DNA from: Monocercomonoides exilis PA203
Lineage: Eukaryota; Protista; Preaxostyla
NCBI GenBank assembly: GCA_001643675.2
Contig: LSRY02000008.1
Location: forward strand, 248,001-312,000
Direction of reading: 5' to 3'
Length of the DNA: 64,000 nt
Shown: positions 5,324 through 54,141 of the stretch, one piece after another
Layout: each line of letters starts with the position of its first letter
Position numbering within the stretch: position 1 is the stretch's first letter
Notes under the pieces: generated by a model
Databases searched by the model: none
The model's input: only the letters and a program-made list of their open reading frames with translations
Told to the model about the DNA's origin: nothing
Made by a program: the position numbers and the translations under genes

Positions 5324-5355
<32 letters not shown>

Positions 5356-10135: not shown

Positions 10136-10167
<32 letters not shown>

Positions 10168-10291
10168 TTCATTCAATCGATTCACAAAAAGAGAGAAGAA
10201 TATCAAAGCAGCTGGGTTTTGTGTGAAAGAAGAGAAAATTGAAGAGTGGGAAAGAAGATGTGGAAGAAAGGGAATTCAAAAAGAAGGAGAA

Positions 10292-10322
<31 letters not shown>

Positions 10323-14063: not shown

Positions 14064-15803
14064 TTAGCAATCCCCTTTCATCCATTCCGGAACCTCGCTC
14101 TCAACATAGTTCTTCCAAAATGTCTTCATCGTCCACCCTTCCTTGTTGCTGATATTTGCATCGTGCCTCATCCACTCCGGCGGTTCGCTCTTAACATTCG
14201 CAATCCACAGCATCGCCATCGTCCTCCCGCTCTTGTCCACTTGTGTTGTTCTGTGCCTCATCCACTCTGGCGGAGCTGTCTTCACCCACGTAATCCAGTG
14301 CATGGCCATCGTCATTCCATTCTGGTCAATAAACACTGCCTCGTGTCTCATCCACTCCGGCGGCTCTGTTTGAACATCTCCAATCCAATGCATCGCCATC
14401 GTCCATCCGTTCCCGTCCCCAACCGTAACCTCGTGCCGCATCCACTCCGGTGGTTCTGATTTGACGTGTCTGATCCAGTACATCGCTATCGTCCACCCGT
14501 CCTTGTCCACTTGCATCCCCCTGTGCCTCATCCACTCTGGCGGCTCTGTTTGCACATTCGCAATCCAGCGCATGGCCATCGTTCTCCCATACATGTCTCC
14601 ACGCCCCACATCGTGCCTCATCCATTCCGGCGGATCGCTCTTCACATTCTCTATCCACAGCATCGCCATTGTTCTTCCTTCCTCGTCTCCCTCTGTCGCC
14701 TCGTGCCTCACTTCCTCTGGAGGCTCTGCTTTTTTTTCAACAATCCAGTTCATCGCTTCTGTTCTTCCATTTCTGTCAAAAACTTTCGCTTTATTCTTTC
14801 CTTCTTCACATCTTTCACATTTTCTCTCATTTTCACAGCTTGCTCCCTCTCCTTTCTTTTCTTTCTCCCGAGGTGCTTTGTCCTCCTTCATCCATTCCGG
14901 CGGATTTGTTTTGATGTGCTTTATCCACAGCATATCCATCGTCCATCCATCATTGTTCGCAAGCGTAACGTCGTGTCTCATCCATTCCGGTGGCTCTGTT
15001 TTCACATTTTCAATCCAGATCATCGCCATCGTCCACCCGTCCTTGTTGCGCAGAGTGATGTCATGTCTCATCCATCCCAGAACATTTGTTTTAACTTTAC
15101 TTATCCACAGCATGGCCATCGTCCAGCCATCATTGTCTGCAAGTGCAGGATCGTGCCTCATCCATTCCGGTGGAGTATTTTCTTTCAAAATAATCCAATT
15201 CATTGCTATTGTTCTTCCCAAAATATCTTTAAGAGCATTATCATGCCTCATCCATTCAGGTGGTTCTGTCTTCACAAATTCGATCCAGAACATAGCCATT
15301 GTGCATCCGTTCTTATTGTTAAGTGCAGGATCGTGTCTCATCCATTCAAGTGGTTCTGTCTTCACATATTCAATCCATATCATAGTTATTGTTGCACCAC
15401 AATTGTTGCGAAGTGTGATGTCGTGTCTCATCCATTCAGGTGGTTCTGTTTTGGCATGTGAGATCCATATCATTGCCATTGTCGATCCATAATTGTTGCG
15501 AAGTGAACTTTCATGTCTCATCCATTCTGATGGTTCAGTTTCAGTAAACTGAATCCACTTCATCGCCATTGTCCGTCCTTCTTTATCAGCAAGTGTGTTG
15601 TCGTGTCTCATCCACTCAGGTGGCTCTGTCCTCACATTTTCTATCCAGAGCATGGCCATTGTGTTTCCCCAATTATCTTTAAGTGTAATATCATGTCTCA
15701 TCCATTCTGGAGGCTCTGTTCGATATAACTGGATCCAGTTCATTGCCTTTGTATCTCCCCATTTATCTTTATCAGGATTCATCGCATCAACTTTATTTCC
15801 CAT
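14064..15803 (-). CDS. 30-aa ankyrin-like tandem-repeat protein (WMRH family), 18 units in two blocks (10+8) joined by a charged linker
   Basis: First ATG gives MGNKVDAMNP. Repeat [DN]xxGxTMAMxWIxxVKTEPPEWMRH with 90-bp period and distinct first/last cap units. Confidence 0.85.
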   Translation of the reverse strand: MGNKVDAMNPDKDKWGDTKAMNWIQLYRTEPPEWMRHDITLKDNWGNTMAMLWIENVRTEPPEWMRHDNTLADKEGRTMAMKWIQFTETEPSEWMRHESSLRNNYGSTMAMIWISHAKTEPPEWMRHDITLRNNCGATITMIWIEYVKTEPLEWMRHDPALNNKNGCTMAMFWIEFVKTEPPEWMRHDNALKDILGRTIAMNWIILKENTPPEWMRHDPALADNDGWTMAMLWISKVKTNVLGWMRHDITLRNKDGWTMAMIWIENVKTEPPEWMRHDVTLANNDGWTMDMLWIKHIKTNPPEWMKEDKAPREKEKKGEGASCENERKCERCEEGKNKAKVFDRNGRTEAMNWIVEKKAEPPEEVRHEATEGDEEGRTMAMLWIENVKSDPPEWMRHDVGRGDMYGRTMAMRWIANVQTEPPEWMRHRGMQVDKDGWTIAMYWIRHVKSEPPEWMRHEVTVGDGNGWTMAMHWIGDVQTEPPEWMRHEAVFIDQNGMTMAMHWITWVKTAPPEWMRHRTTQVDKSGRTMAMLWIANVKSEPPEWMRHDANISNKEGWTMKTFWKNYVESEVPEWMKGDC

Positions 15804-16639
15804 TTCCTTGCTATTCTCTACAAAACTGAAAACACTTTTTGCTTGCAAACAAGCGATTCAACAAATATGTTCGATCTTTCAATAACTCTGTTTTGTTATG
15901 GGTCTCTGCAATATTTGAGAAGTTTTTTTATGCTTTATGAATTTTGTTCCTCGCGATGTTTTCTGATATTTTTCTCAATTTTTTGATGTTTCTTTTTTCT
16001 TTCTTTCTTTCTTTCTTTTTTTGCGACTATTCTGAACCAAAAACAATTGAACGAAATTTTAAAAATCAAAAGAAATAAAAGCACATGAATGAAATTTTCT
16101 CTTATGAGAACACGATCGATTGTGAAATGGTTCAGATATGCGGATACTGCTTAAGTTAAATTAATTTTCAACATCAAATTTTGTTAAATTGAGTGAAGCG
16201 AATTCAAGTTATCGAGATCATTGAAGCTGTGATGCATTTGTCAATAAAAACGAAAGGAAAACGATTGAAATGTTTCCAACCACATTTTCAGCCATATTTT
16301 AATCTTCAACAGAAATTTTGAAAGATCTTTGGGTGGACAAAAGAAAGGCCAACAAAAATATGAAAAATGAAGATCGAAGGTAGAATAAGCACTCAAAAAG
16401 AAGAAGTACATTTTCAGAATCGAAGATTCAACATACTTGTGAATTGTCCCTCTTTTTGAGACGCAATAAAGAAGAAGGGCAGAGCAGTTGTAAACACATC
16501 GGTTACTCGATTCCTTTGCATTAATGTTCAAAGATTACATGACAAGAATCAATGAGAAACTGATCGTGTCTGAGAATTGGTGAGAAGATGATAAAACTTG
16601 TTCTCAGCGACTGGCTTTTGCATTCATAACTAAGTTCAA

Positions 16640-18930: not shown

Positions 18931-19019
18931 GGTTCCATCATCGTAGTTATCGAAGTTCATGTGTTAGCAGAATTATGTAAAAAAGGTGATATCTGAGGCT
19001 CTCTGAACAGCATCTGCTT

Positions 19020-21758: not shown

Positions 21759-22682
21759 TCAACCGTTCATCCAAGATGGTACCTCTGTGTCAGCATGAAT
21801 TCTCCAATGATCCCCTATGGTTTTTCCTTCCTTGTCTCTAATGGCTGCGTTGTGCCTCATCCACTCTGGTGGCTCTGTCTTTGCATGTCTTATCCAATGC
21901 ATTGCCATTGTCCTTCCACTCTTATCATGAAGTTCCGCTCCATGTCTCATCCATTCAGATGGCTCTGCATTAACATAGATAATCCATATCATAGCCATTG
22001 TCCACCCATCCATGTCTGCAAGCACCTTGTCATGCCTCATCCATTTGGGAGGTTCTGTTTTGACATTTGCAATCCATATCATGGCCATTGTCTCTCCACC
22101 TCTATCGCGAAGCGCAATATCATGCCTCATCCATTCTGGTGGCTCTGTTTTTATCTCCATAATCCACAGCATTGCCATTGTTCTTCCCCACTTATCGGCA
22201 AGTGTGTTGTCGTGTCGCATTTGTTCTGGTGGCTCTGTTTTGTTCTCAATAATCCACGTCATTCCCGGTGTTTGTCCATTTTCATCTTTAAATGTTTCAT
22301 CAAATGCCATCCATTCTGGAAATGCAGCTCTTGTATAAAATTTCCAATAATCTGCCATTGTCAACCCATTCTTGTCTTCAAGAGAATTGCGATGCCTCAT
22401 CCATTTCGGTGGCTCTGTTTTGACTTCCCTTATCCACCACATGGCCATTGTCCATCCATCGTTGTCTGTAAGCTCCTTGTCATGCCTCATCCATTCTGGA
22501 GGTTCTGTTTTTATCTCCATAATCCACAGCATTGCCATTGTTCTTCCCCACTTATTCCTTATCGATATATCATGTTTCATATATTTTGGTGGCTCTGTTT
22601 TGTTCTCCACAATCCAATTCATTGCTCTTGTCATTCCACATTCATCTATCTTTGGGTTTAAAGAGCCCGCTTCGTTTCCCAT
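21759..22682 (-). CDS. 30-aa ankyrin-like tandem-repeat protein (WMRH family), 10 units
   Basis: First ATG gives MGNEAGSLNP. Same repeat, with an internal cap-like FPEWMAF-DET..GQTPGM junction. Confidence 0.85.
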   Translation of the reverse strand: MGNEAGSLNPKIDECGMTRAMNWIVENKTEPPKYMKHDISIRNKWGRTMAMLWIMEIKTEPPEWMRHDKELTDNDGWTMAMWWIREVKTEPPKWMRHRNSLEDKNGLTMADYWKFYTRAAFPEWMAFDETFKDENGQTPGMTWIIENKTEPPEQMRHDNTLADKWGRTMAMLWIMEIKTEPPEWMRHDIALRDRGGETMAMIWIANVKTEPPKWMRHDKVLADMDGWTMAMIWIIYVNAEPSEWMRHGAELHDKSGRTMAMHWIRHAKTEPPEWMRHNAAIRDKEGKTIGDHWRIHADTEVPSWMNG

Positions 22683-25172
22683 TCTGTCTGTGTTTTTGAG
22701 CGGATACAATGAAGTGCTGTTTGTTTTTCAATCGAAAAAGAAAAGATCAAAAAATGAAATAATTTGTAAAGGGCGAATAATATTTTAAATAGCGTTTTTT
22801 CAAAATATGACGAACATATTTCACAAAATTGGTAACAAAATATTATTTATGACAACCGATAAAAATAATCAGAGAGAAAGAGAAAACACGGAAAAAGAAT
22901 GAGAAAAATACAACCGAAATGATAATGATACCAATTGCAGCAGATTGTTAGGAACTTTTGAGCAAAATGAATGAGGAAGAAGAAAAAATTGATGATGCAA
23001 CTAATAAGGTTGTTGAAAATGGAAGAGAGAAAAAAGGAGAGCGATGAGGAAGTGATGGAGATAAAGCATGAAAGCAAATGATGAAATCAGACTTTTTCTC
23101 TTTTTTGGATCTTCTTCTTCTTCTTCTTCTTCTGCATCCGCATAACACTCATCCACAGCATTTGCATAGGCACAGGTGTTTGTGCAATGCTGGCAGAATT
23201 CGAAGCACATGAGCTTGATAACAAAACATTCCCAGTGTCTTTTCAAAAGAGGCAGTTGTCTGTTCAATTTGTGTCGTCTCTGCTGCAGAAGAAGAAGAAG
23301 AAGAAGAAGAAGAAGAAGAAGATATCACAAACAAGTTCCGCTTTTCCCTCTTTCTCTCTCTCTCTCTTTCCTTCGGCTTTTGACAAGATTCGCCTTATGT
23401 GCCTTCCAAAACCTTCCAAAAAAATAAAAAAAGAGAATGTCTTCTTCTCTTTTCCTTCTTATTCCATCCATCTTATTCCTCCATGCTCCCCTTCATTTGT
23501 CATGTCCTTGTCTCTTCAGATGCACCCAACATGTTCTCTTTCCTCATTCCTTGTTCATTCATTGCCATTCATCATTCTTGCAAAAAAAAGCCAAGTTTCA
23601 TGAAAAATAACAAAAGATGATGAAAATCATTGAATAAACATGCAAACCTATGACTTTGTTGCAAATAATCTTCACAAACTTTCTTCTTTCTTCTTCTTCT
23701 TCTTCGCAAAATATCGTCCCTTTCTGCCTGCAAATTCCATCTGTCTCGTCTCCTCTTCTTTTCCACCTCTGCTCCTGAAAATAATACCCAAAGCCCAAAC
23801 CTTCGGTTTTGTTTCACGTGGAATAACTTCCATAAGCTCTGTTCGATTGAAATATCAAAATGTGTTCATTCCATCAGAAGAACCCCTTCCCATCCCTTGT
23901 TGCTGCATCGCCTTTTCTTTTTTTTCTCTCTCTCTTCATTTTCCCTCATTGCAAAAACGCACATCTGCCTCACATCCATTATCTCCTCCACAAGCAATGA
24001 TAATATTCTTTTCTCCTTCTCTCTCAATCTCCCCATTCCCCTTCGCTCTTCTCCCAATAAAAAATAAATGCTCCCATCATTTTTCTGTATCGAGTGATCG
24101 AAGCCATCTTGTGGTCAGCCCCTCATCTCGCTCCATCCACGCAGCACATCTGCCTCCACTTCATCAATGCAAAGTGTCAGCGTTAATGTTCCTTCTTCCC
24201 ATCTTCCTCCGCCTCCACCTCCATCCCTTGCGCTGCAAACGCCAGGCGCAACCTAACAGTCCTCCAAATAATATGCGAAAACTCAAAAACTTCCCTCACT
24301 TTCTTCTTCCTCCCTTCCGCACAATTTTCCACCGAAGTTTCATCCCTAACCGCTCATGTACTCGCAATAACCTCCCTTAACCTTCCACATGTGCCTCCTC
24401 TCTCAGTGTATTTTATAAAACCATCTTCTCCCCATATATCTCCATTTCTCATCCAACTTTTATCATTTCCTCCAATAAAAACATTGTCTATTCGCTCCAC
24501 CCATCTTCCGCCTTCCTTTCCTCCATCTCGTCCCATCTCACTGCATCAAATTCCATTTCTCCAGTAATAAACAAGAACCCCGCCCCTCACTCCTGATGAA
24601 TTCAATAAAGGAAAACCTCCTTTCACGTCCACAATCATTCATTACACATCCTTCATCCTCAGAAAATTCATGTTATAACATCTTCTCATTCATTTCAAGC
24701 TTCGATCATTTTTTCTCCTCCAGAATCCTGTTTCACCCACAAATGTCTCAATCCCTCCAAAACATATTTTTAATTATCTCATGCACCTCAATCAAAACCA
24801 CATGCCCTCACAGCTGCGATGCACAAAGTTGTATCACTTTTTCTTTTCATATCCAAATATTTTTATGGATATGATCCACGAATTTGTTCAAAACAAAGAA
24901 ACTTTCTTTCTCTTGAATGGAATTTGAATTCAAATATAGTCATCTGCACCAGACAAATAAATATCAGAATTGATTATGGACTGTATGACACATTTTTAAA
25001 TTATAATTGCTTTCATTTTATTGTTAAAAAATTCAAAAAATGAATATTTTGTGAAAAAATTTTGTTTTCGTTCAAGACATTTCGCTGCAGTGATGATAAT
25101 AGCTTCATCAAGTTCGATCTTCCATTTTGGTTAGGTTATGAAAGTGGGAACGAAAATTTGTTCAAAACGCGT

Positions 25173-26890: not shown

Positions 26891-26942
26891 CAAATGTCTA
26901 TGATTATTATATGGGTGCTTTTCTACAAATGCGCAAACATAT

Positions 26943-27667: not shown

Positions 27668-29113
27668 CTAAACATTCACAAAATAGTCTGCAATGTCCGA
27701 TGAAAATGAATAATAATAATATTCATAGGAAAGAAAGTCAAGCAGTTTATTTAAGCTTGTGATGATATCTTCGTATCCTTCTTCTTCCATCTTTTCGAAC
27801 ATTTTCATTTTCATCTCTTTCCTTTCCTCCTCTTTCACTTTTTCCTCCTCCTCTTTTTCATCTTCTGTTTTGTACAATCCACTTGAAATAATATCAAAAC
27901 ACTCCAAGAATCCACTTGTTATTTCGTCATTCAACGTTGGTCGTTGAAACTCCTCCAAAACAACATCAACAGCTCCTCCTTTTAACAAGTCTTCAATTTT
28001 CACAACCCTATTATCTGCTATTTCTTTCAATAAATGAATGCATTGAAGGCTCACTTCTCTGTTATTATCCTTAGCTGCCAGAAATACCCGAACAATACTG
28101 TTTAAAAGTCCGACAAATTCTTCATTCCACATTGTGCAATAGAGAAAATAACGTTCCAAGGTATTTAGCCATCTCAATAAAACAAGCTCTTTTTTTGTCT
28201 CTTTTTCCTCTTTCTCCGCTTCTTTCTCTCTCTTCCTATTCACACTTTTCATCAGCTCTTCCAATTCTCTTTCCGCCTCCCTTAAGAAATGCAGCTCATC
28301 AACAATTACTCCTTCAAAGCTTTTGTAGTATGGCAATCCGTTTATCAAAAACTGCCAAGATGATTGACATGCAAGTCGTGTAAGATTGTGATGCTTTTGA
28401 TGATATTGAATGACCTCCTTGATTTCATTGATGAAAAGTTCTTGCTCCACTTCCTAATGAAAAAATAAGGAATGAAAAATCAATAATATAAAATAAGGAA
28501 ACAGAAATGTTCACACTCCATATCCAAATCCACTCAAAGCCAGCAAAACTATTTCCACTTCTTTTTGTGCCTCTTCGTTTTCTTCTTTATTCAGTGCAAC
28601 TTTCAAAAGGCAAGACACGCCAGTTGAAAGCAATTCCTCAGAAGCCCACCTGTTCAACAAAAGATAGCATTCACAAAGATCAATCAGAAGTTTTTCATTC
28701 TTCTCCTCTTTTTTCTTTTCTTCTTCTATTATCATCTTCTCAAATCTTTTGTCCAACGAAGATTCTTTAAAATGATTGTTCCAAATATGTTTCAATACTT
28801 TGCAATGTCCAATATGCTTCAGCACCAAAATTGCATTTTCCAAAGATAATTTCTTTTCTTCAATCATTTCGTGTATTTTGTTGAATAGATCTGTTTTAAA
28901 AAAAGCATATAATTCTTCTTTATTCATTTCATCAATGACTCTTTTCATTTCTTCTATTTTGACTTTCTGCTCAACTTCGGTGCAATCTTCAAGCTCTGAA
29001 AGCAATCCTTCAATAAAAAAGAAAAACAAAGAAAAAAATCATTGCAAACAAGAATTCAAAAGCAACCACGACTGCTTACCATTGAACTTTTTTGTGTTGT
29101 CCATGCCCTGCAT
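27668..29113 (-). CDS. Lineage-specific helical (ARM/HEAT-like) multigene family protein 'ELEDC', 3 exons (29113-29080, 29007-28517, 28453-27668), ~436 aa
   Basis: GT-AG introns restore one frame (1311 nt). Intron positions and phases are the same in all three paralogues. Conserved motifs include SLENAI, KNEKLL.DL, HHNLT and DLLKGGAV. Confidence 0.8.
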
Positions 29114-29165
29114 TTTTTAAAGTTCATTGTGTCCAGAACACAATGCAGTTTTGCCATTCACATTG
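29114..29165 (-). promoter_or_regulatory. Conserved upstream motif of the ELEDC family (aatgtgaa[tc]ggcaaaact...tg[tg]ttctg...aaaaATGCAG)
   Basis: Found at the same distance from the ATG in all three paralogues, including the copy outside the duplication (46789-46840; 58338-58389). Confidence 0.5.
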
Positions 29166-29889
29166 AAAACGAGAATGTTTGGGCAGAAGAAATTTGCGAA
29201 AAATATTAACACAAATGGAAGTCAAAGTGCGTGCACTCACACCGACATCCTTCGTATATTATCTTTGGCAAGTAATTTCGAAGAAAAATAGAAGTTTTGT
29301 GTTCTTTCTTTTATTTGTTATGGATTCACTGATTGAAAAGCATTATTTGAACTGGAATATCAATTTGCAAAATGAAAGTTGACGAATGAATTCATACTGC
29401 GGAATTTAGAAATATTATTTCCAGTAGAAACTGCAGGCAGTGATGGCAGTGCACAAATATTGAAATTCTGTCAGTTGATTTTTGGTAATTGGATGGAAAA
29501 AGGAAATCCAACAATTTAATTCATAACACAAAAGACGTTGTGTATGTGCTTTTTATTGTTCTTTTGATTGTGAAGATATTTTCATCTGTATCCTCTCTAA
29601 AGTCGTGATTCAGACAATTTATTTGAAAAAGTCAGTTTATTCGTTATTTTGGAAAACAGGGAAGAAGAGATCCAAACACAATCTTACAAATATATTAGAG
29701 CCTGGATATTTTTTGTTACGAATGTTTATGTTACTTATTTTTGACTCAACATGCGCGATGCATCGAAAAACGATGAAAAATGAATTTTGATGGAGCAGAA
29801 ATCAACGGGGTTAGAAGATGTTCAAGACTAAAAAGGAAGAATGATCAATCTCTCTGAAAAGGAAGCGATTTTTGAAGAGAAAGGAGATA

Positions 29890-30050
29890 TTTTCAAACTC
29901 ATTTGTTGGAGAGATTGGGGCAGATGACTGAAACAGGAGATTGGCAGCAGCTACAGCAGAACAAGGCACATTTCTTCGTATCGAAAGGAAAGAACATTGC
30001 TTTTATGGACTTAGGAGAGGGATGGAACTGAATTTGATTCCTTGACTTGA
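29890..30050 (+). pseudogene. PROPPIN (ATG18/WIPI-like) WD40 remnant; second copy ~57460-57620 on the minus strand
   Basis: QTH...TETG/RLAAATAEQGTFLRI...FYGLRRG resembles AH...G.LLATASEKGTLIRV...[FL]RRG; flanked by a frameshift and stops. Confidence 0.5.
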
Positions 30051-30699
30051 GAGCCACAAATACGAGTTAATCTGTCATTTTGGCGTTATACAGGCAGCTG
30101 GAGGCAAATGACAGGTTTCATGGATTAGTCATTTTGCTATCGCCGTTGGAATTATATCATTGAAATATTATCCACAAGGGCAAAGAACGAGGTTGCAATG
30201 CTGAGAATATCCTCCAACAGAAGATATCCGATACTTGAGATCTTAAGTGCGTCTTCTTCTTCAACAACGCCATTGTCATCATCTTCTCCTTCTTCACCTT
30301 CTTATTCTTCTTATTCTTCTTCACCTTCTTCACCTTCTTCACCTTCTTCACCTTCTTCACCTTCTTCTTCTTTCCATGTGTTTTGCTCAGATATATATGT
30401 TAAAGAAAGTTATTCTTTTTTTGGGATTGAAGAAATGTTATTTTCATTCGAAAAACTTTTTGAATGAAAATGTGCGCTTTTCGAAATAGGAGCGAGAGAG
30501 AGAAGGGGAAAGAAGATATTGAGGACGAAGAAGTAGAAGAGGAAGAGGAGGAAGAAGAAGAAGAAGATGATGATGAGAAAGAGGAAGAGGAAGAATAAGG
30601 AAAAAAGAAGACTTTTGTGATGAGAAAGACGAAGTTGATGAAAAACTGGGGAGGTGAAACCGAAGAGTCAATCACGCCCAATGCTCACTCAAAGGATAG

Positions 30700-31050
30700 G
30701 AGCATGTTGTTGATCTCCGTCTCTTGTTTTCACTCATAACTTGTTTTTTTTCACTGCGAAGAAGAAGAAGAAGAAGAAGAAGGTAAAGAAGAAGAGGAAG
30801 AAGAAGATGATGATTGTTATGAAACAGATGGCAAGACAGAAATACTTCTCCCTCTCCTTTTCCCCTCGCCATATCCTCGTGAATCTTCTCAACGTTCTGC
30901 CCATCACATTGAGGCAACCGAAAAGCAGATCTCAATTTTTTCATCATTCCTCCAAAACTGCATTGCAACAAGCTCTGCCAGCATCATCGTCATCCAAAAC
31001 ACCATCAGCTGCCCTTCTTTCTTTTGCGCCTTCGGCTGTTCAGCTTCCAC

Positions 31051-31081
<31 letters not shown>

Positions 31082-32548
31082 CAAACAGGCACATATCGCT
31101 TCGCCTCCACCTCTGCCAATACCCTCCCACAGACATCATTAAAAGCATACACACCTGGTTGTCCAGCACCTTCATCAGCAGCTCAAAATGTTGGCGTTTT
31201 CTCTCTTTTCAATCGGATTGTTCTCTGAAGGAAACAGAAGCGCACTCAAATTATCTTCTTTGCACACGCACGCACGCACGCACACACACACACACACACA
31301 TCTGGATGGCTTATGAACAGCATGAAGAAGTCGTGGCAAAGACATGTCTCCAGCACAGATGCGAAGGAAAAGACAGAGAAAACAAAAGCAGCTTGCATTC
31401 ATCACAGAAGATCCTCAACGGCAACACAGGGTGTGTCTGTGGAGTCTACCAATGGAACACACAGAAAAGAATTCGCCTTCGAACACGATGACTCAACCAG
31501 CCGCCAACAATGGCGATGAAGACGATGAAGAGGAAGAAGAGGAAGATGATGAAGACGATGAAGACGATGAAGAAGAAGAAGACGATGAAGACGATGAAGA
31601 AGAAGAAGACGATGAAGACGATGAAGACGATGAAGAAGAAGAAGACGATGAAGACGATGAAGACGATGAAGACGATGAAGACGATGAAGACGATGAAGAC
31701 GATGAAGACGATGAAGACGATGAAGACGATGAAGACGATGAAGACGATGAAGACGAAGAAGCAAATGGATCACCAGAACATGTGGCATCATTCATTGAAT
31801 TTATCTCCATTTTCTGCTTATCTTCTTTTGTCCTGTTATTATTCAGCAGAAACTCCAGAAACACAAACACATCAGCCACTCCCATCTTTGGCTGCATCTT
31901 CTCAGACTCTCCAAATAACATCTTGATTTTCTTCTCCTCTGCCCTTTCAAGCGCCGTGTCGAAGAACAAGAAGAACGAATGCCTCATCTTTTTTGAACTC
32001 CTTCCTCACAAGATACACAAACAGCCACATCTGTGCAAAGTTCAACAAGAAAAGCTTCTCTCCCCTTGTGTATTATCACATTTCAGACTGATTTGCTCTT
32101 CTTCTGCTTCTCGGCCATCTTCTTGAATACCTCCTTCTTCTCGCTTATTGTCTCTTGTTGCACTTTCGACAGCACCATCAGCATCTTCGCTTCCTTCTGC
32201 ATCCTGTTCATCTTCTGCCTCACAGTTCCCTAACCACTCCTCCTTCTCCTTCTTTCTCCTTCATCTCTTTCATCTTCATCATCTCAATTATCTCCACCAT
32301 CTTCATCATCTTCTTCTCCTTCTCCTTCTCCTTCTTCACCTTCTTCTTCTTCTTCTCTTTGTTGTTCTTCTCGCTCAGCTGTGCCATCTTCCTCTGCAAC
32401 ATGAATGTGATCTTCCTCTTCTCCTTCTTCTTCATCTGCTCATCTGACTTGATTGTCTGCTTCGATATAATTTCGTCTTCTTTTAATCTTTTGCATCAGA
32501 ATGTAATCTCCAAACACATCCTTTTCTTCTTCTTTTCTTTGTTCTTCT

Positions 32549-32580
<32 letters not shown>

Positions 32581-32620
32581 TTCCTGTTAATCTGTTTCTT
32601 CTTCTTTTCAGTTGTCCAAG
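30700..32620 (-). pseudogene. Decayed low-complexity gene of unknown family (twin at ~54780-56730 on +)
   Basis: Fragmented Lys-rich/Ser-rich frames, with similar breaks in both arms. Confidence 0.4.
31516..31760. repeat. (GAAGACGAT)n 9-bp minisatellite
   Basis: Direct reading; the twin is longer. Confidence 0.9.
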
Positions 32621-33196
32621 TGAATGAATGAATGAATATTTGTCCCTTCGATGTCTTCTGCCACACCCTCAGACACTCACACACTTAACTGTTGCTGTGG
32701 CTGATACAAATGAATGCATCCCTGAAGAGATTTGAAATGTGAATGAAAAAATAAAAAATAAAAAAGAAATGAGTTGGTGAAAAGAAATGACTGAATTCAA
32801 TTTTTCGAATGTTTCTTAAAATCTTTGTTCAAAAGCAAAAGAGCAGAAAATATAAGACTCAACATAATTTCACAGGTTTGCTATTTTCCACAACTTGGCT
32901 TTTCATTTTCATTCACTTATAATTTGTTAAACGAACGTCAAATGAAATAAAAATATGAATAATCAATATTAAAATTTTTTTCTGTTTTGAAAAAAATGTT
33001 TGAATAACAAAATGCAACACTGCCAAAAATCATGCAATCGCTTTATGCTCATTTTCTTATTTATTTAAAAAATAAGTTTATTTCTAAATATTACAAACAT
33101 TTATGATCATATATATAATATTTATTTCAAATAATATTTTTTAACGATTGAAATTTTTTCTGCTTATATTGCAGGACGAGCAGCAAAACCGAAGTG

Positions 33197-35392: not shown

Positions 35393-38300
35393 GAAGGGAA
35401 TAATGAAGATTTATTATTTGAAGCGAGATCCATTGCCATCACGAATGAAACAATGCATTTCAGCTGAAGACGAAGGCGAGAGGGCGAGAGTTGAATTAGA
35501 TGCACCAGAAATGGAAGAAGGCTGATAATACCGCAAGAGTGATTGAATCATTTGCATTGAAGATATTATTTCTGAAGCATTAAACAAACGAACCGACTGA
35601 TTTGCATGTGTGCAAATTAAGGCTGTTTAGCAACATTTCTTAATTCATGACTTTTCTTTCTTTCTTCTCTCTTTCTTTGAAGTTGGTTTTGTTCTATTGG
35701 CAGATGGTTGGACGTGCTTCAAAGATATCTCATTTTGATGTCCTTTCGATTTGCTTTCGATTGTTTTTTCATTTCAGCAGAACAATTGAAGCTGTTCATT
35801 TCAAAGTTTTTATTTTTGCTTATTTTTCAAAATATATCTTTTCAATTTTTATTTGATTTTGTAAATAATGAAAGAAAATCTCAATTCAAATCATCTTGTT
35901 TTCTTTTTATTTTTCTTTTTATTTTTTCTTTTTTCCAATTTGTCAATGTGACCGAAAATTCACTTTGGCATTTTGAAAATGAAATGAGCATTTCTGTGAT
36001 TTTGGAGTTGAGAGAACTGTTGTTTTTGGTTGTTGTGCTTTGACGATTTTGTTGCAGCCATTTTGATCAGATTCAACAGTTGCGATTCAGTTAATTATTG
36101 GCTCAAGTTTGTTCATTTTTTGGAATTGAGAGTGTTTCGTTGCTGTCTTGCAAAATACACAGAATATTCACAAAGACAACATGAACTTTGACGTTCAGAT
36201 GTTTCATTTGATTTCACACGAAGTCACAATTTCTGAGAAAGACATAACAAACATCTGTCAGTGTCACATTAATGATTTATAAAAAAAAAAGCTTCGAAGA
36301 AATATACATTTTTCTATCGCATTGACAAATCACATTACACAATAATATGTGTGGAAAAAATAAAATTGATTATTAAAATAGGAAATTCTTTTGTGAAATA
36401 GACTCCATTGGTGTTGTTGAAAACTCATTTATTGAAGTGTGAGAAATTCTCTTCAAACATATCTGAATGACAAAAATCAGAGTTCGAATCGAATTTTTTC
36501 TCTTTCGAATTGTGGAAGAAGGCAAACAGATGAAGAGAAGAAAACCTCGAGGAGAGAGCGTGAATGATTCCATGAAGAAGACTCGTGAACTGTTTGAGAT
36601 GGAAACTATGGAAATGCCATTGAAGAAAGGAGAAAAATAAATGGATCAATCACAATCATCTGAACATCTTTTCTGCTGAACAATGTTCAGCTGGATGCAT
36701 TTTTAGCCAAATGTTCAGACATGAATCTTTTGATGAGAATTGGAAAAGATTTTCTTTTCCATTCACTTCAACAACAGAAACAGAATCTTCATTTGCCATG
36801 CAGGAGAATTTATATCCAACCACTTCATTCGTGTTGAATCTGATTTTACCAATCACTTGAATGTGGATTTGAGGGGTTCGCTGTTTCTGTTGTTGGGTGG
36901 AAGAAACGAGATGAATGAAACGAAAACAGCTGTTCAATTCCCATTTGTGGTGGGAAATAATATCTTCCATTCATTTCACGAAGACAAAGAATAATCTTCA
37001 ATGACTTATCAATATTCTCACACTTCATAATTCTCTGAGCATGCGATGTATTCATCCATCTCTTCATCAACAGCCATGCCATCCATGAGTGATCATGAGG
37101 AGGAGGACGAAATCCTTCTGCCCTCATCAGTATTTGAGGTGAAAGATGCCAGAGCTGGTGATGGGAATGAAGATGTGAATAACAAAGGAGGATGTGATAT
37201 GCTCAATCTGGACAATCCTTTCAGAGCATTTGATGCTGCTTGTTCACTTTTGTGGGAGAAATGTTGGCAGATACGCTCCATCTTTTATTCGTGTCTGTTC
37301 TGTTGTTGACTTTGGTGCTCAATCTGGCCAACGAATTAATAAACAAGAAATATGGAAAATTATCGTCTGCACAACTGATCCAACCATTTCCTTCTTTTCT
37401 CCTTCAAACGCCTCTTTCTCTTCGCCATGTTTTTTTTCCTTCTTCTTTTGTCTTCTATTTTTTCATCTTTATCTCCTTCGCTTTTTCGGTTCTTCCACAT
37501 ATTCGTTTATGAGTGCATGAATTTCTGTGGTTGCATCTCTGCTGCAATCATTATCTCTCACAGTCCTGACTCCAGTTTCTGCCTCTCTTCATTCCTCTGA
37601 GGAGGCTTCTCTTTCACTTTCATTTTCTACGGCTCATCACCCCTCATTGCAGATGCGATCATTCTTTCCATTCTTCTTCTTCTTCACATCCTTCCTTCTT
37701 CTTCATATCCTTCCTCTGTTTCTAACTTCAATCTTTTCAACTCTCTCTTCTTCTCATTTTGTTTTCTTCCTCCAACAATCCTATTCCAAAGCCATTTCCA
37801 TTCCCTTTCTTTTCCGATTCTCTGGTCGCCTCTCTCACCAAGCACAGCCGCTCTGCAACGGTCTCTTCCAAATATTTTTCATTGAATCATCTGTTCACAA
37901 AAAATATCCTCAATTAAGCAAACAATGCCAAGCTCAGTGTGGCCGAGGCGCTTCTGATGACGTCTCGTTCAATGCCATCATTTTGAAGAAACCTAATTAA
38001 TCAACACAAAAAAATAAAAAAAAATATTGCAATCATCAATTATGAAACAAGTGAAATAGTACATTCTATTTATCAGCGTCACACAACCTCAAAACAGTCC
38101 TTTCCGCTTTTTGACGTTTATTCAAGCTATTTTTCAACAAATTGCAAAGGCAATCATTCAATGAAAAACATCATTCGAAAAGAACAATCAGTGATTTTTC
38201 ATCCTTCTCTTCTTCATCAACAATCATCTTTCCAATTTTTCCACTTACTGAACGATTTACAAAACCATCTATCCTTATCCCATTCAGCTCTTTGCAATAA

Positions 38301-45371: not shown

Positions 45372-46788
45372 TCAAGCCTTTAAAATAAGGTGCAAAACAA
45401 TCACAATTAATTGAGTATAAATTTGTCTGTTTCGATTATTGAATATATCATGAATGCTTATGACAATATCTTCAAATCCTTCTTCTTCTAGTTTTTCAAG
45501 CATTTTCATTTTCGTTGCCTTTCTTTTCGCTTCTTCCATTTCATATCTCTCTTCTTCTTTCAATCGATATGAAACATTCGAAAAGAATTGCAAGCTTTCA
45601 AATGCAATTTTGCCATCCACTGTTCGTCGCTGCATCTCCTCCAAAACAGCATCAACAGCTCCTCCTTTCAACAAATCTTCAACTTTCATAAATCTATTTT
45701 GTGTTGCATTTCTCAAGGAATAAATGCACTTGTCACTAATTTCTATGTGATTATCCTTCGCTGCTCGATATACCTGAACAATTCTGCAAAAAAGGCAAAC
45801 ATATTCTTCATTCTGCAATGAACAATAGCGAAAATAAATCTTCAATGTTTCGACCCATCTCATCAATGTAAGTTCTTCTTTCGCTTCTTCTTTGCTCATT
45901 TCCTCTTCTTTCTTCTTCCAATTCACGCACTTTGTCAGCTCTTCCAGTTCTCTTGTTGCCTCCTTTACAAAATGAATTTCATTCATAACAGCATGGTCAA
46001 TGATATAATTGAACAATAATCGGTCTATAATAAACTGCCAAGCCGACTGATAGGCAAGTTTTGTAAGATTTCTGTGCTTCTGCTGATGTTTGATGATTTC
46101 TGTAATTTCCTTCAAATATAGTTCTTGTTTCACTTTCTAATCAGAAATAAATGGAGGAAAAAGCAAACACAATAAAAATGAAATAGAAGTGCCCATACGC
46201 TACATCCCATTTCGCTCAAAACCAGCAACGCTATTTCCACTTCTTTTTGCGTTTCTTCGCTTTCCTCTTTCTTTGAGACAGCTTTCAGAAGGCAAGGCAC
46301 ACAAATTGATATCAATTCGTCTGAAATAAAGTAGAAATTTAACAAAGAGAAGCATTCGCAAAGATCAACCAAAAGACTTTCGTTCTTTCCCTCTTTTTTC
46401 TCTTCTTCTTCAATGATCATTTTCTTAAATCTTTCGTTCAATAAAGATTCACAAAATGCATGATCATAAATGCGTTTCATCGCACAGCAATATCCAACAT
46501 TCTTCAAAAACAAAATTGCATTTTCCAAAGAAAAGTTCTTTTTTTCAATCATTTTGTCAATTGTGTTGAACATCTCTTTTGTGAAAACTAGTTTTTGTTT
46601 ATTTCTGTCCATTTCATCCATCAATTCATTCAGTTCTTCGATTTTATGTTTTTGCTCTTCCGCATTGCAACATTCCATTTCAGAAAACAATTCTTTAAAA
46701 AAATAAACAAAAAATGTAACCTCCAGCAATTCAAATGCAACAACGAGGACAAACCATTAAATCTTTCAGTTGCACTCGTTGTCTGCAT
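45372..46788 (-). CDS. ELEDC-family paralogue, 3 exons (46788-46755, 46692-46199, 46136-45372), ~430 aa
   Basis: 34-nt first exon (MQTTSATERFN), gtttgt/gtatgg donors, same motifs; 1293 nt in frame. Confidence 0.8.
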
Positions 46789-50650: not shown

Positions 50651-52362
50651 TGTTGGCATCGTTTGCGATTGCTGTTTTGAGTTTTGGACTGATAATTGAC
50701 TTCTTGTTTGTTGATTTTTTTATGATGTTTTTTTTTCTCCAAACCTTTTGTCAAATGACAATGTTAAAGTGATGAAAAAAAGGTCTATGAAAAAAGAGCT
50801 TCAACGTTGACTTGTGTTCTTTGGTGATGCGTTTGACGAAAAATACTAAAATAATCAACTTGCGTGTAAAAAATAAAAAGCTGTTATTGACAAATCCGAA
50901 TAACCAATTAAATAAAGGAAATAACAAATGCAAATAACTAAAAGAGTCAAATACAAACATTCTGCTTTGCTTTCTTTTATTTTCCAAACAATAATAACAT
51001 AATTTGTGAAAGATTTTTCATTCAAATTGCGATATCCTCTCACTCCGATTGAAAGAATAATGTTTGACTCTCTAAACTTGAATGCATTCGCTGAACCTTC
51101 TTCAGCGGATAAGATGTTCAGAAGATTGTGATTGATCCATTTATTTTTCTCCTTTCTTCAATGGCATTTCCATTGTGACCATCTTAAACAGTTCATGAGT
51201 CTTCTTCATGGAATCATTCACGCTCTCTCCTCGAGGTTTTCTTCTCTTCATCTGTTCGCATTCTTCCGCAATTCGAAAGAGACAGTTTTCAATCGGAACT
51301 CTGATTTTTGTCATTCAGATATGTTTGAAGAGAATTTCTCACACTTCAATAAATGAGTTTTCAACAACACCAATGGAGTCTATTTCACAAAAGGATTTCC
51401 TTTTTATAATAATCAATTTTATTTTTTCCACACATATTATTGTGTAATGTGATTTGTTAATGCGATATAAAAATGAATATTTTTTCAAAGCTTTTTTTTT
51501 TATAAATCATTAATGTGACACTGACAGATGTTTGTTATGTCTTTCTCAGAAATTGTGACTTCGTGTGAAATCAAATGAAACATCTGAACGTCAAAGTTCA
51601 TGTTGTCTTTGTGAATATTCTGTGTATTTTGCAAGACAGCAACGAAACACTCTCAATTCCAAAAAATGAACAAACTTGAGCCAATAATTAACTGAATCGC
51701 AACTGTTGAATCTGATCAAAATGGCTGCAACAAAATCGTCAAAGCACAACAACCGAAAATAACAGTTCTCTCAACTCCAAATCACAGAAATGCTCATTTC
51801 ATTTTCAAAATGCCAAAGTGTGTTTTCGGTCACATTTGCAAATTGGAAAAAAAAGAAAGAAAGAAAATAAGATGATTTGAATTGAGATTTTCTTTCATTG
51901 TTTACAAAATCAAATAAAAATTGAAAAGATATATTTTGAAAAATCAACAAAAATAAAAACTTTGAAGTGAACAGCTTCAATTGTTCTGCTGAAATGAAAA
52001 AACAATCGAAAGCAAATCGAAAGGACATCAAAATGAGATATCTTTGAAGCACGTCCAACCATCTGCCAATAGAACAAAACCAACTTCAAAGAAAGAGAGA
52101 AGAAAGAAAGAAAAGTCATGAATTAAGAAATGTTGCTAAACAGCCTTAATTTGCACACATGCAAATCAGTCGGTTCGTTTGTTTAATGCTTCAGAAATAA
52201 TATCTTCAATGCAAATGATTCAATCACTCTTGCGGTATTATCAGCCTTCTTCCATTTCTGGTGCATCTAATTCAACTCTCGCCCTCTCGCCTTCGTCTTC
52301 AGCTGAAATGCATTGTTTCATTCGTGATGGCAATGGATCTCACTTCAACCAATAAATCTGCA

Positions 52363-54141
52363 TTATTCCGTTCCCGATTCTATCTTCAACTTCAAGTGTA
52401 TTTCCTTTCCACTTTCGTTCTGATGCTTTTGTAACATTTCCTTGAGCCAACGCATTGCATCTGTCGCTCCATCATTATCTGCAACAACAACAACAAATTC
52501 ATCGTATTTCATCCATTCCGGGATCTCTCTTCTCGCATATTCTTCCCAATAGTCAATCATCGTTTTCCCAGCCTTATCCTTAAGTTCATTTTTATGCCTC
52601 ATCCATTCTGGTGGTTCAGTTTCAGTGAACTGAATCCACATCATCGCCATTGTTCGTCCCAGGATATAGGTTCGTTCAATGTCATGTCTCATCCATTCTG
52701 GTGGCACATTCTTCACATTTTCTATCCATTGCATGGCAATTGTCAAACCATAACTGTTACCAAGTATAATATCGTGTTTCATCCATAATGGTGGGTCTTT
52801 CTTCACAAATTGAATCCACTTCATTGCCATCGTATTTCCTTCCTTGTCAGCAAGCGTGGGATCGTGTCTCATCCACACTGGAGGATCAGCTCTTACGAAA
52901 ATAATAAAATATATTGCCATCGTCCATCCATCGTTGTCTGCAAATTCAGCTTCGTGTCTCATCCATTCAAGTGGTTCTTTTCTGTTATGAATGATCCACT
53001 TCATGGCCATTGTTCTTCCATTTTTATCAGAAAATGTCTCTTCATGTCTCATCCATTCCGGCGGTTCTGCCTTCACATATTTTATCCATCCCATAGCCAT
53101 CGTTTCTCCTTTGTTATTTTTTTGTGTTATTTCATGCCTTATTGATAAAGGTGGTTCTGTTTTGACCTCCTTTATCCACAGCATGGCCATTGTTTCTCCT
53201 TTCTTATTTCCAAGTGTAATTTCATGTATCATCCACATTGGTGGTTCTGTCTTCACGTATTCAATCCATAGCATGGCCATTGTTTGTCCGAATATTCCTG
53301 TAATTTCGTTGTCATGTCTCATCCATTCTGGAGGTTCTGTTTTAACTTGCTTTATCCAATGCATAGCCATTGTCCTGCGAAAATTATCTTTAAGTGTTGT
53401 ATCGTGTCTCATCCATTCTGGAGGTTCCGTATGGGTAAATCCAACCCACAGCATTGCCATTGTCCAACCATAATTGTTGCGAAGTGTAATATTATGTCTC
53501 ATCCATAAAGGAGGTTCTGTCTTGACCTCCTTTATCCAGTGCATTGCCATTGTAAATCCTTCCTTATCAGCAAGCGTAATATCGTGTCTCATCCATTCAG
53601 GTGGTTCTGTCTTGGTAAAGAAAATCCAAAACATAGCCATCGTCCATCCGTCGTGATCAGAAAGTGTAATGTCATGCCTCATCCATTCAGGTGGTTCTGT
53701 CTTCACATATTCAATCCAATATATAGCCATTGAGCATCCTTTATGATTTGTATATGCAATATCGTGCCTCATCCACTTCGGCGGTTCTGTATTGATGTAA
53801 ATAATCCAATAAAAGGCCATTATTGATCCAGTTTTATTTGCAAGTTTAATGTCATGTCTCATCCATTCTGGTGGCTCTGTTTTGATGTTTGTGATCCACA
53901 TCATCGCCATTGTTGATCTATTATTATTTCTGAGAGTTATTTTATGTCTCATCCATTGTGGAGGTTCCGTATGGGTAAATCCAATCCACAGCATTGCCAA
54001 TGTCCAACCTTTATTATCATGAAGCGTTGTTTCATGTCTCATTTCCAACGGAGGTTCTGTCTTTTTCTCAACAATCCATCGCATTGCTTCTGTTCTTCCA
54101 TCTTCGTCCCTTTTCAATGGATAACTTTCCAATTCTTGCAT
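52363..54141 (-). CDS. 30-aa ankyrin-like tandem-repeat protein (WMRH family), 18 units; positional twin of 33197-35392
   Basis: Intact ORF (MQELESYPLK...). N- and C-termini match the 33197 gene, but the internal repeat array differs. Confidence 0.85.
   Translation of the reverse strand: MQELESYPLKRDEDGRTEAMRWIVEKKTEPPLEMRHETTLHDNKGWTLAMLWIGFTHTEPPQWMRHKITLRNNNRSTMAMMWITNIKTEPPEWMRHDIKLANKTGSIMAFYWIIYINTEPPKWMRHDIAYTNHKGCSMAIYWIEYVKTEPPEWMRHDITLSDHDGWTMAMFWIFFTKTEPPEWMRHDITLADKEGFTMAMHWIKEVKTEPPLWMRHNITLRNNYGWTMAMLWVGFTHTEPPEWMRHDTTLKDNFRRTMAMHWIKQVKTEPPEWMRHDNEITGIFGQTMAMLWIEYVKTEPPMWMIHEITLGNKKGETMAMLWIKEVKTEPPLSIRHEITQKNNKGETMAMGWIKYVKAEPPEWMRHEETFSDKNGRTMAMKWIIHNRKEPLEWMRHEAEFADNDGWTMAIYFIIFVRADPPVWMRHDPTLADKEGNTMAMKWIQFVKKDPPLWMKHDIILGNSYGLTIAMQWIENVKNVPPEWMRHDIERTYILGRTMAMMWIQFTETEPPEWMRHKNELKDKAGKTMIDYWEEYARREIPEWMKYDEFVVVVADNDGATDAMRWLKEMLQKHQNESGKEIHLKLKIESGTE

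What the first reader, a model, noticed from the sequence alone, without database searches (positions are those of the whole stretch)
14064..54141. Natural DARPin-like library: 68 units of a 30-aa ankyrin-derived repeat in four genes, variable at the ankyrin binding positions
Seen: the consensus is xxxxx[DN]xxGxTMAMxWIxxVKTEPPEWMRH, with no indels within internal units and almost no identical units. There are dedicated first (TEAM/TKAM/TRAM) and last (D/EYW...EVPEWM) cap units. Established: ankyrin/DARPin repeats are DxxGxTPLHLAAxx, and the randomised binding residues are the x positions around D..G and after helix 1. These are the columns that vary here, often to aromatic or charged residues. 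The second ankyrin helix is replaced by TEPPEWMRH. I see no signal peptide, TM segment or effector domain, so these would be cytosolic pure binders, possibly for intracellular defence (inference).
Basis: partly seen in the sequence, partly recalled or inferred. Interest (0 to 1): 0.8.

Follow-up and report, generated by a model that had tools for sequence, protein, structure and literature searches.

The report
Shortened ankyrin-repeat gene family, reshuffled arrays
Four transcribed-looking genes of the gut protist Monocercomonoides exilis encode 68 copies of a 30-residue, very diverged ankyrin repeat. This is a common protein-binding fold that standard domain models miss, and the repeat arrays are reshuffled between gene copies while the DNA on both sides stays nearly unchanged.

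Summary
Genes A (14064-15803, -), B (21759-22682, -), C (33197-35392, +) and D (52363-54141, -) carry 18+10+22+18 = 68 in-register 30-residue units. No two units are identical, and dedicated first and last cap units are present.

The fold is ankyrin. The AlphaFold model has pLDDT 92, and every top PDB, viral and ESM Atlas match is an ankyrin or DARPin protein (Z up to 15.8). A family profile reaches true ankyrin proteins in 1.8 billion sequences, although Pfam finds nothing in the four proteins themselves.

The six most variable columns map onto the DARPin randomised positions. Their dN/dS is 0.60 (0.45-0.80), against 0.14 for the scaffold columns. That is relaxed constraint, not demonstrated positive selection, so I found no evidence for the "defence library" reading.

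- C and D lie in an inverted duplication. Its flanks are 91-100% identical, but the arrays are only 63-70% identical.
- Nine paralogues on this contig show the same pattern. Single units match different paralogues at 93-100%, so the arrays are mosaics.
- Relatives exist outside this genome, in metagenome contigs. Some form tandem gene arrays and about 1 in 11 are fused to a RING ubiquitin-ligase domain.

The scan had already found this family at least eight times on other DNA of this genome. Verdict: a new variant of a known fold, most likely a set of protein-binding scaffolds.

The parts
14064..15803 (-). Gene A, 579 aa. It has two capped arrays of 10 and 8 units joined by a 30-residue Lys/Glu/Cys-rich linker, and starts Met-Gly-Asn.
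21759..22682 (-). Gene B, 307 aa, 10 units arranged as 4+6 around an internal cap pair. It starts MGNEAGS, a possible N-myristoylation site. This protein was the one modelled.
33197..35392 (+). Gene C, 731 aa, 22 units (7+15), followed by an acidic linker and a C-terminal helix tail. Exact RNA-seq contig pieces cover it.
52363..54141 (-). Gene D, 592 aa, 18 units plus a degenerate tail unit. The upstream ATG used by gene C is TTG here.
32652..33226 (+). Conserved non-coding block of 575 bp directly upstream of gene C. Fourteen copies at 83-100% identity exist, all on this contig and each in front of a family gene.
   Evidence: RNA contigs are almost absent over it.
54142..54707 (-). Copy of the same upstream block in front of gene D, 91% identical to the copy at gene C.
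35393..36650 (+). Conserved non-coding block of 1,258 bp downstream of gene C. At least 12 copies at 83-96% identity lie on this contig. Its first 430-650 bp also follow tail-type family genes on other contigs at 74-81% identity.
51131..52362 (-). Copy of the downstream block after gene D, 96% identical to the copy at gene C.
22683..23300 (-). Upstream block of gene B. Copies at 82-97% identity lie in front of other Met-Gly-Asn-type family genes on the same contig.
28069..36701 (+). Left arm of an inverted segmental duplication. Its partner is 51081-59426. Flanks are 91-100% identical, but the repeat array inside is only 63-70% identical.
51081..59426 (-). Right arm of the inverted segmental duplication. 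It contains gene D.

Best explanation
The four genes belong to a large family of M. exilis proteins. I counted at least about 69 loci and 1,584 units with the exact core motif. The proteins consist almost entirely of a shortened, 30-residue ankyrin repeat. Each unit keeps the ankyrin hairpin (D-x-x-G-x-T) and the first helix. The second helix is cut down to one turn (E-W-M) after a Pro-Pro pair, and Met and Trp side chains probably fill the core in its place. The units stack into a capped solenoid. The six most variable columns lie on the hairpin tip and on the exposed side of helix 1, which form the binding groove in known ankyrin proteins. The proteins therefore most likely act as intracellular protein-binding scaffolds or adaptors, each paralogue with its own partners. 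One subfamily may be membrane-anchored through N-myristoylation. The family diversifies mainly by exchanging whole units in register between paralogues (non-allelic recombination or gene conversion), not by fast point substitution. Shown here: the repeat anatomy, the fold prediction, the link to ankyrin, purifying selection, the mosaic arrays, the conserved flanks, and presence in RNA libraries. Inferred: binding through the concave face, the kind of partners, myristoylation, and the recombination mechanism.
For: Anatomy.

Fold: the AlphaFold model of B has pLDDT 92 and pTM 0.72, with one 9-residue helix and one 3-residue turn per unit. Foldseek against the PDB gives 222 hits at E<=0.001, and all listed ones are ankyrin or DARPin proteins. 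An independent aligner gives Z 15.8 to AnkB over 298 of 307 residues, and all 50 top entries contain ankyrin repeats. BFVD and ESM Atlas matches are also all ankyrin, with TM 0.60-0.69 for the Atlas. The nearest language-model clusters are ankyrin, score 0.96.

Homology: the family profile finds 305 proteins at E<=0.001. They include P0072 (Pfam Ank_2 2e-238; family profile E 5.7e-24), P0126 and P0149, both with a 33-residue period. The close relative P0005 (E 1e-64) passes the Pfam Ank_2 cut-off. Twelve of 134 relatives carry Ank_2.

Register: the HMM alignment to a 33-residue ankyrin places the 3-residue gap after W-M-R-H and matches the G-x-T, helix 1 and L-L positions.

Selection: overall dN/dS is 0.23. 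It is 0.14 at scaffold columns and 0.60 at variable columns.

Expression: exact RNA-seq contig pieces cover gene C in 4 runs of one study, with near-empty flanks.

Mosaicism.

A binding role in relatives: RING-fused homologues.
Against: - Pfam gives no ankyrin hit in any of the four proteins, even at E<=1.
- A genome-wide Ank_2 scan hits none of the family loci I listed.
- A family profile finds no PDB chain.
- hhalign against single M. exilis ankyrin segments aligns only the hairpin motif and is not significant.
- The fold rests on a prediction whose alignment was built from paralogous windows, and I could not read the coordinates. The claim that the variable residues form one face therefore comes from the HMM register and helix periodicity, not from measurement.
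- No binding partner is known.
- The RNA evidence is assembled contigs from a single study, and such libraries can contain DNA.
Confidence: 0.8

Rival explanations
1. One reading: a germline recognition repertoire under selection for diversity. The arrays are kept different from one another because each must recognise a different, changing target, such as viruses, bacteria or mobile elements. The conserved flanks serve shared regulation or act as recombination handles.
For: Non-coding flanks are more conserved than the coding arrays. In 36 paralogue pairs, the 5' flank averages 89% identity and the 3' flank 84%, against 78% for even the best-matching units. Both flanks beat the units in 28 of the 36 pairs. 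The C/D duplication shows a sharp island of divergence exactly over the array. Units are exchanged out of order between paralogues. About 29 of the roughly 69 loci I counted lie in the first 1.05 Mb of one 1.96-Mb contig. The variable columns are rich in aromatic (21%) and charged (31%) residues. Relatives sit in virus-like contigs.
Against: dN/dS at the variable columns is 0.60 and significantly below 1. Units are old: mean DNA identity is 62%, the same within and between genes. No sensor, effector or signalling domain is attached. No expression or infection data bear on this. The flank pattern could also come from recent duplication followed by ordinary gene conversion, without selection for diversity.
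Confidence: 0.12
2. Substrate receptors for ubiquitin ligases. In relatives the array and the RING ligase are one chain. In M. exilis the stand-alone arrays would hand substrates to a separate ligase, or block one.
For: P0001-P0004, P0010 and a neighbouring gene on contig L041 combine the same repeat type with a C-terminal RING (Pfam zf-RING_2 down to 8e-11). Twelve of 134 relatives carry a RING. The canonical ankyrin protein P0072 also ends in a RING.
Against: No RING, F-box, U-box or SOCS-type domain is found in the four window proteins or their tails. The RING of P0003 finds only unrelated RING genes in M. exilis. The C-terminal tail of C and D is predicted as a disordered acidic linker plus one low-confidence helix.
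Confidence: 0.15
3. The genes are of viral origin or are passengers of a mobile element. On this view the family spread as part of a giant-virus insertion or a repeated cassette, and has no host function.
For: Metagenome contigs L041 and L042 are almost entirely tandem, same-strand arrays of family genes. Other contigs with relatives are gene-dense, made mostly of genes with no known family, and carry a deoxynucleoside kinase, T5orf172, helicases and a resolvase. The M. exilis genes come as a cassette with fixed 5' and 3' blocks.
Against: Coding sequence is under purifying selection, with dN/dS 0.23. Almost all copies listed have intact reading frames. RNA contigs cover gene C. A scan of 2.9 million viral contigs found no relative. 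The closest named viral structures share at most 17% identity. One relative, P0005, sits on a clearly eukaryotic contig. I saw no terminal inverted repeats or target-site duplications, though I did not search for them systematically.
Confidence: 0.07
4. A metal-binding solenoid. The invariant Met-x-Met, Trp and His in every unit would form a row of Cu(I)-type sites, as in CusF or the Met motifs of Ctr1. This comparison is from my own knowledge and was not tested.
For: The composition is unusual: Met 9-10% and Trp 6-8%. M12, M14, W16, W27, M28 and H30 are each conserved in 82-98% of 660 units.
Against: In the HMM register these residues take the places of ankyrin core residues (P7, H9, A11 and the L-L of helix 2). 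They are therefore most simply core packing that compensates for the lost helix. No metal-binding family matched.
Confidence: 0.03

Closest known systems
Canonical ankyrin repeat proteins (Pfam clan Ank: PF00023, PF12796), for example AnkB/AnkR membrane-binding domains
   Same: The predicted solenoid matches one repeat to one repeat (298 model residues on AnkB residues 481-818, Z 15.8). Both share the D-x-x-G-x-T hairpin, an amphipathic first helix and terminal caps. Variability is concentrated on the hairpin tip and the exposed side of helix 1. The family profile reaches true ankyrin proteins.
   Different: The period is 30 residues, not 33. Helix 2 is reduced to one turn after Pro-Pro. The core is rich in Met and Trp (T-M-A-M-x-W-I and P-x-W-M-R-H in place of T-P-L-H-x-A-A and the helix-2 Leu pair). 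The family is invisible to all Pfam ankyrin models.
DARPins (designed ankyrin repeat proteins)
   Same: Both are capped arrays of near-consensus units with a fixed scaffold. The variable positions fall in the same register: DARPin 33, 3, 5, 13 and 14 correspond to columns 5, 8, 10, 18 and 19. DARPins are among the best structural matches.
   Different: This family is natural, much longer (10-43 units) and built on a different scaffold. Its diversity arose over long evolutionary time, with dN/dS below 1. No selection for binders has been shown.
Ankyrin multigene families of giant viruses and poxviruses (ankyrin plus PRANC/F-box proteins)
   Same: Both are large paralogous families and form tandem gene arrays. 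Both couple ankyrin-type arrays to ubiquitin-ligase modules; here the module is a RING, in the metagenomic relatives. Giant-virus ankyrin proteins are good structural matches.
   Different: Sequence identity to named viral proteins is at most 17%. No relative was found in the viral contig collection. The M. exilis members have no ligase-recruiting domain.
Clustered repeat-protein families that diversify by recombination, such as the leucine-rich-repeat regions of plant NLR gene clusters (from my own knowledge)
   Same: Both are clustered paralogues that exchange repeat units in register. In both, a solvent-exposed set of positions is variable and the repeat region diverges more than its surroundings.
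   Different: The fold is different. No signalling domain is attached. Positive selection at the exposed sites is not shown here.

Membership tests
Ankyrin repeat superfamily | Stacked helix-loop-helix plus hairpin units forming a curved solenoid | tested here: met
   The AlphaFold model has pLDDT 92. All top matches in the PDB, BFVD and ESM Atlas are ankyrin proteins, with Z up to 15.8 and TM 0.60-0.69 for the Atlas. Helix 2 is only one turn long in the model.
Ankyrin repeat superfamily | Match to curated ankyrin sequence models (Pfam Ank, Ank_2-5) | tested here: not met
   No ankyrin family appears at E<=1 for any of the four proteins. A genome-wide Ank_2 scan gives 34 hits, none at the family loci I listed.
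Ankyrin repeat superfamily | Statistically supported sequence homology to undisputed ankyrin proteins | tested here: met
   The family profile hits P0072 (Ank_2 2e-238) at E 5.7e-24, P0126 at 4.6e-15 and P0149 at 7.3e-12 in 1.84 billion proteins. The close relative P0005 passes the Ank_2 cut-off, 29.8 against 27.3 bits. Comparison with single M. exilis ankyrin segments was not significant.
Ankyrin repeat superfamily | Repeat length of about 33 residues | tested here: not met
   The period is exactly 30 in all 68 units. The 3-residue deficit falls after W-M-R-H in the HMM alignment.
Ankyrin repeat superfamily | Ligand binding through the concave face (hairpin tips plus helix 1) | not testable with these tools
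   Only the position of the variable columns in the ankyrin register is known.
   The six highest-entropy columns are 18, 10, 5, 15, 19 and 8. They map to DARPin 13, 5, 33, 10, 14 and 3. Position 10 is not randomised in DARPins but lies on the same helix face.
Diversifying recognition repertoire (immune-like) | dN/dS above 1 at the contact positions | tested here: not met
   dN/dS is 0.60 (0.45-0.80) against four-fold-site divergence, from 81 reciprocal-best unit pairs. The pooled estimate cannot exclude episodic selection.
Diversifying recognition repertoire (immune-like) | Clustered paralogues that exchange segments, with the variable region diverging faster than the flanks | tested here: met
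   mosaic arrays and conserved flanks; clustering on contig C80.
RING E3 ligases with ankyrin-type substrate-binding arrays | RING domain in the same polypeptide | tested here: not met
   A RING is absent from the four window proteins and from the M. exilis loci examined. It is present only in metagenomic relatives.

The most novel reading that the evidence does not exclude
The family is a germline-encoded combinatorial recognition repertoire. Selection keeps the arrays different from one another while conserved 5' and 3' cassettes provide shared regulation or recombination handles. The same repeat type is used by giant-virus-like elements, there fused to RING ligases, in an arms race over protein degradation.
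Probability: 0.1. Interest if true: 0.8.

Novelty: new variant of a known kind. Interest (0 to 1): 0.42.

Why it matters
The family shows that the ankyrin fold tolerates near-loss of its second helix. It supplies a natural 30-residue scaffold with a Met/Trp core that protein designers could test.

It also explains part of the "unclassified repeat" and "hypothetical protein" content of the M. exilis genome. The genome papers name tyrosine kinases as the largest family and do not mention this one.

The pattern of conserved flanks around reshuffled arrays is a clean, testable case of diversification by unit exchange in a protist.

The RING-fused relatives give a concrete functional lead.

Tried and rejected
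- Pfam on the four proteins: only sub-threshold noise.
- Family profile against PDB sequences: no ankyrin hit, only a chance titin match at E 0.86.
- hhalign of the family alignment against two M. exilis ankyrin segments: only 9-10 columns of the hairpin aligned, not significant.
- Word-based protein search with B: a single outside hit. The exhaustive profile search was needed to see the wider family.
- Viral contig scan: 41 pattern matches, none confirmed.
- Search for a RING next to M. exilis family members: none.
- C-terminal tail of C and D: no Pfam family. The model shows a disordered acidic linker and one helix at pLDDT 54-67, so I claim no fold for it.
- Rfam on the conserved flanks: nothing. 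There are no long ORFs in the 3' block.
- The joints seen in RNA contigs inside gene C (skips of 379-993 bases) are most likely assembly chimeras between similar units. I did not count them as splicing or rearrangement.
- The idea that stops interrupt the tail in paralogues was dropped. The alignment simply runs past the normal stop, because D carries a 4-codon extension.
- Literature: no paper holds the motif strings or links Monocercomonoides with ankyrin families.
- The share of family loci on contig C80 comes from the best 150 rows of two searches. It is a biased lower-bound count, not a census.


Full report
CONTEXT. Earlier notes of this scan identify the genome as Monocercomonoides exilis. 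The window is contig C80, 248001-312000, of an 82.3-Mb assembly in 101 contigs, which agrees with the published long-read assembly (PMC8767320). The scan has already met this repeat family at least eight times on other DNA of the genome, and earlier agents called it a shortened ankyrin repeat. I treated that as a lead and tested it again.

OBSERVATION. Four ORFs carry the repeat: A 14064-15848 (-), B 21759-22709 (-), C 33194-35392 (+) and D 52363-54171 (-).
- Anchoring on G-x-T-x4-W gives 18, 10, 22 and 18 units, each exactly 30 residues from the next.
- No two of the 68 units are identical. Mean identity is 52% (protein) and 62% (DNA). It is the same within genes (0.624) as between genes (0.616), so the arrays are not being homogenised.
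- G9, T11, W16, P24, P25, W27 and M28 are 87-99% conserved. Columns 5, 8, 10, 15, 18 and 19 exceed 3 bits of entropy. The same six columns rank first in 660 units from 30 paralogous ORFs.
- First units have a polar residue in place of M12. Last units replace I17 and carry E-[VI]-P-x-W-M. Internal last/first cap pairs divide B into 4+6 units and C into 7+15 units, and A is two capped arrays joined by a linker.
- The likely true starts are ATG codons. A and B then begin Met-Gly-Asn, while C and D begin MSGK.../MQ[KE]LES.
- No hydrophobic span, signal-like N-terminus or Pfam domain is present.

FOLD AND FAMILY.
- Pfam finds no ankyrin model in these proteins, even at E<=1.
- A genome-wide Ank_2 scan finds 34 places, none at the family loci I listed.
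- A family profile finds no PDB sequence.
- An AlphaFold model of B, using 54 in-register windows from paralogues as the alignment (A1), is confident: pLDDT 92 and pTM 0.72. Each unit has one 9-residue helix (columns 12-20) and one 3-residue turn (E26-W27-M28).
- Foldseek against the PDB gives 222 hits at E<=0.001, and all listed ones are ankyrin or DARPin proteins.
- An aligner that does not depend on Foldseek gives Z 15.8 to AnkB repeats 13-24, with 298 model residues on chain residues 481-818. That is one model repeat per ankyrin repeat. All 50 top entries contain ankyrin repeats.
- Viral and ESM Atlas structure libraries, and language-model features, also return only ankyrin clusters.
- Confidence dips to 73 at the internal cap junction of B. 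Many hits align only units 5-10 or units 1-4, which suggests a kink between two sub-arrays.

SEQUENCE LINK TO ANKYRIN. The exhaustive profile search of 1.84 billion representatives returns 305 proteins at E<=0.001 and 41 at E<=1e-30.
- The hits include proteins that Pfam calls ankyrin without doubt. P0072 has Ank_2 at 2e-238 and the family profile at 5.7e-24. P0126 and P0149 have a 33-residue period.
- The close relative P0005 (E 1e-64) passes the Ank_2 gathering score.
- Of 134 relatives scanned, 12 carry Ank_2, 12 carry a RING domain, and most carry nothing.
- The HMM alignment to P0126 fixes the register. G9, T11, helix 1 and W27-M28 fall on ankyrin G4, T6, helix 1 and the helix-2 Leu pair, and the three missing residues lie after W-M-R-H.
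- Columns 5, 7, 8, 10, 18 and 19 therefore correspond to DARPin positions 33, 2, 3, 5, 13 and 14. Column 15 corresponds to position 10 on the same exposed helix stripe.
I could not read model coordinates, so "one face" remains an inference from register and helix periodicity.

SELECTION. I took 81 reciprocal-best unit pairs (below 99% identity) among 30 paralogous ORFs and pooled Nei-Gojobori counts per column.
- Overall dN/dS is 0.23.
- Against divergence at four-fold sites (0.22), the six variable columns give 0.60 (bootstrap 0.45-0.80; 0.05% of bootstraps reach 1). Columns 1-4 and 7 give 0.52, and the other 19 columns give 0.14.
- The genes are therefore functional. The exposed positions evolve about four times faster than the scaffold, but average positive selection is not shown.
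- Pooled estimates cannot exclude episodic selection.

EXPRESSION. Four RNA-seq runs of one study hold 61-67% of the sampled words of gene C. Exact contig pieces of 133-260 bases tile 33360-35454. The 32936-33069 and 36152-36400 bins are empty in all runs. This supports transcription, with two caveats: these are assembled contigs, and they come from a single study.

- C and D lie in an inverted segmental duplication, 28069-36701 against 59426-51081.
- In 150-bp windows the flanks are 91-100% identical over 3 kb upstream and 1.3 kb downstream. Identity falls to 63-70% exactly over the array.
- The 575 bp upstream of C occur in 14 copies at 83-100% identity, all on C80 and each in front of a family gene.
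- The 1,258 bp downstream occur in at least 12 copies at 83-96% identity on C80. Their first 430-650 bp also follow tail-type genes on other contigs.
- Gene B has its own conserved upstream block.
- In 36 pairs of nine C80 genes, the 5' flank averages 89% identity and the 3' flank 84%. Even the best-matching units average 78%, and only 9% of units find a partner at 90% or more. Both flanks beat the units in 28 pairs. The other 8 pairs all involve a truncated gene whose 3' flank I could not place.
- Painting each unit with its best match elsewhere shows mosaics. C5 is 100% identical to a unit of L006. C11, C13 and C14 are 96% identical to units 19, 21 and 15 of L013, so the order is not preserved. 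D1-D5 follow L003, and D17-D19 follow L031 at 97-99%.
- The simplest reading is recent duplication of a cassette followed by in-register exchange of units with more distant paralogues. The alternative is homogenised flanks around arrays that are kept diverse.
- The flanks contain no long ORF and no Rfam family.

SIZE AND PLACE.
- The DNA pattern for PPxWMRH occurs 1,584 times in the genome, and its reversed control occurs 0 times.
- From the best rows of two protein searches I count about 69 distinct loci. About 29 of them lie in the first 1.05 Mb of C80, which is 1.96 Mb long. This count is biased towards close relatives.

RELATIVES ELSEWHERE.
- The nearest outside proteins, P0001-P0004 (E 1e-108 to 1e-70), use a 29-30-residue version of the same unit and end in a RING finger.
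- Contigs L041 (14 kb) and L042 (9.6 kb) are almost entirely same-strand tandem arrays of family genes. One scores 661 bits and carries the same T-L-A-M-x-W-I...T-E-P-P-E-W-M-R-H consensus, and at least two of the genes on L041 carry a RING.
- Other contigs are dense, made mostly of genes with no known family, and carry a deoxynucleoside kinase, T5orf172, helicases or a resolvase. That looks virus-like but is not proven.
- P0005 sits on a eukaryotic contig of 55% GC.
- No relative was found in the viral contig collection. Named viral ankyrin proteins share at most 17% identity.
- No M. exilis member examined has a RING.

OTHER FEATURES.
- The Met-Gly-Asn start is conserved in six paralogues, and the genome has an N-myristoyltransferase (E 5.6e-52). 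Myristoylation is plausible for B-type proteins and less so for A, which has Asp at the preferred small-residue position.
- The tail of C and D is conserved in nine paralogues. It is predicted only as an acidic disordered linker plus one helix.

LITERATURE. No paper in the library holds the motif strings, and none links Monocercomonoides with an ankyrin family. The genome papers name tyrosine kinases as the largest family.

VERDICT. The proteins are most likely intracellular protein-binding scaffolds. The defence or binder-library idea has no direct support, and the dN/dS test goes against it. The unit reshuffling between conserved flanks and the RING-fused relatives are genuine leads. Overall this is a new variant of a known fold, already seen repeatedly by this scan.

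Noticed in passing
window 40483-42217 (+): Fragmented retroelement. One ORF has a reverse-transcriptase domain (RVT_1, 4.6e-14). A following ORF has a weak Dam-like adenine methyltransferase match (4e-5, below the Pfam cut-off). This domain pair recalls DIRS-type elements (from my own knowledge). The reading frames are broken.
   Followed up: partly
window 31514-31761 and 55608-55934: 9-bp Asp/Glu-coding tandem arrays lie in the two arms of the inverted duplication. They have different copy numbers, 27.9 against 36.7.
   Followed up: no
window 27668-28450 (-) and 45372-46133 (-): Two paralogous ORFs of about 255 aa with similar N-termini and no Pfam family. This is probably another local gene family.
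   Followed up: partly
window 1286-10432 (+): A 3,048-codon open frame built largely of GAA/TTC-type low-complexity repeats, with no significant Pfam match. It may not be a real gene.
   Followed up: no
L041 1-12385 and L042 1-9589 (metagenome contigs): These contigs consist almost entirely of same-strand tandem arrays of genes with the same 30-residue repeat, some ending in a RING finger. The source organism is unknown, either a virus or a protist with a compact genome.
   Followed up: partly
window 33194-33229 and 54141-54171: The first ATG of gene C (MSGK...) is TTG in gene D and in two paralogues, so most members start 10 codons later at MQKL. A conserved TATTGCAG|G, which looks like a 3' splice site, lies about 50 bp upstream of that start.
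   Followed up: partly
window 34006-35000 (RNA contigs): RNA-seq contigs show joints that skip 379-993 bases, or go back, inside the repeat array. These are most likely assembly chimeras between similar units. I did not test them as real isoforms.
   Followed up: no
G000:C80:89500-104800 (L065/L066): Two family genes of 832 aa form a near-identical inverted pair about 10 kb apart, complete with both conserved flank blocks. This is a second inverted duplication of the cassette on the same contig.
   Followed up: partly
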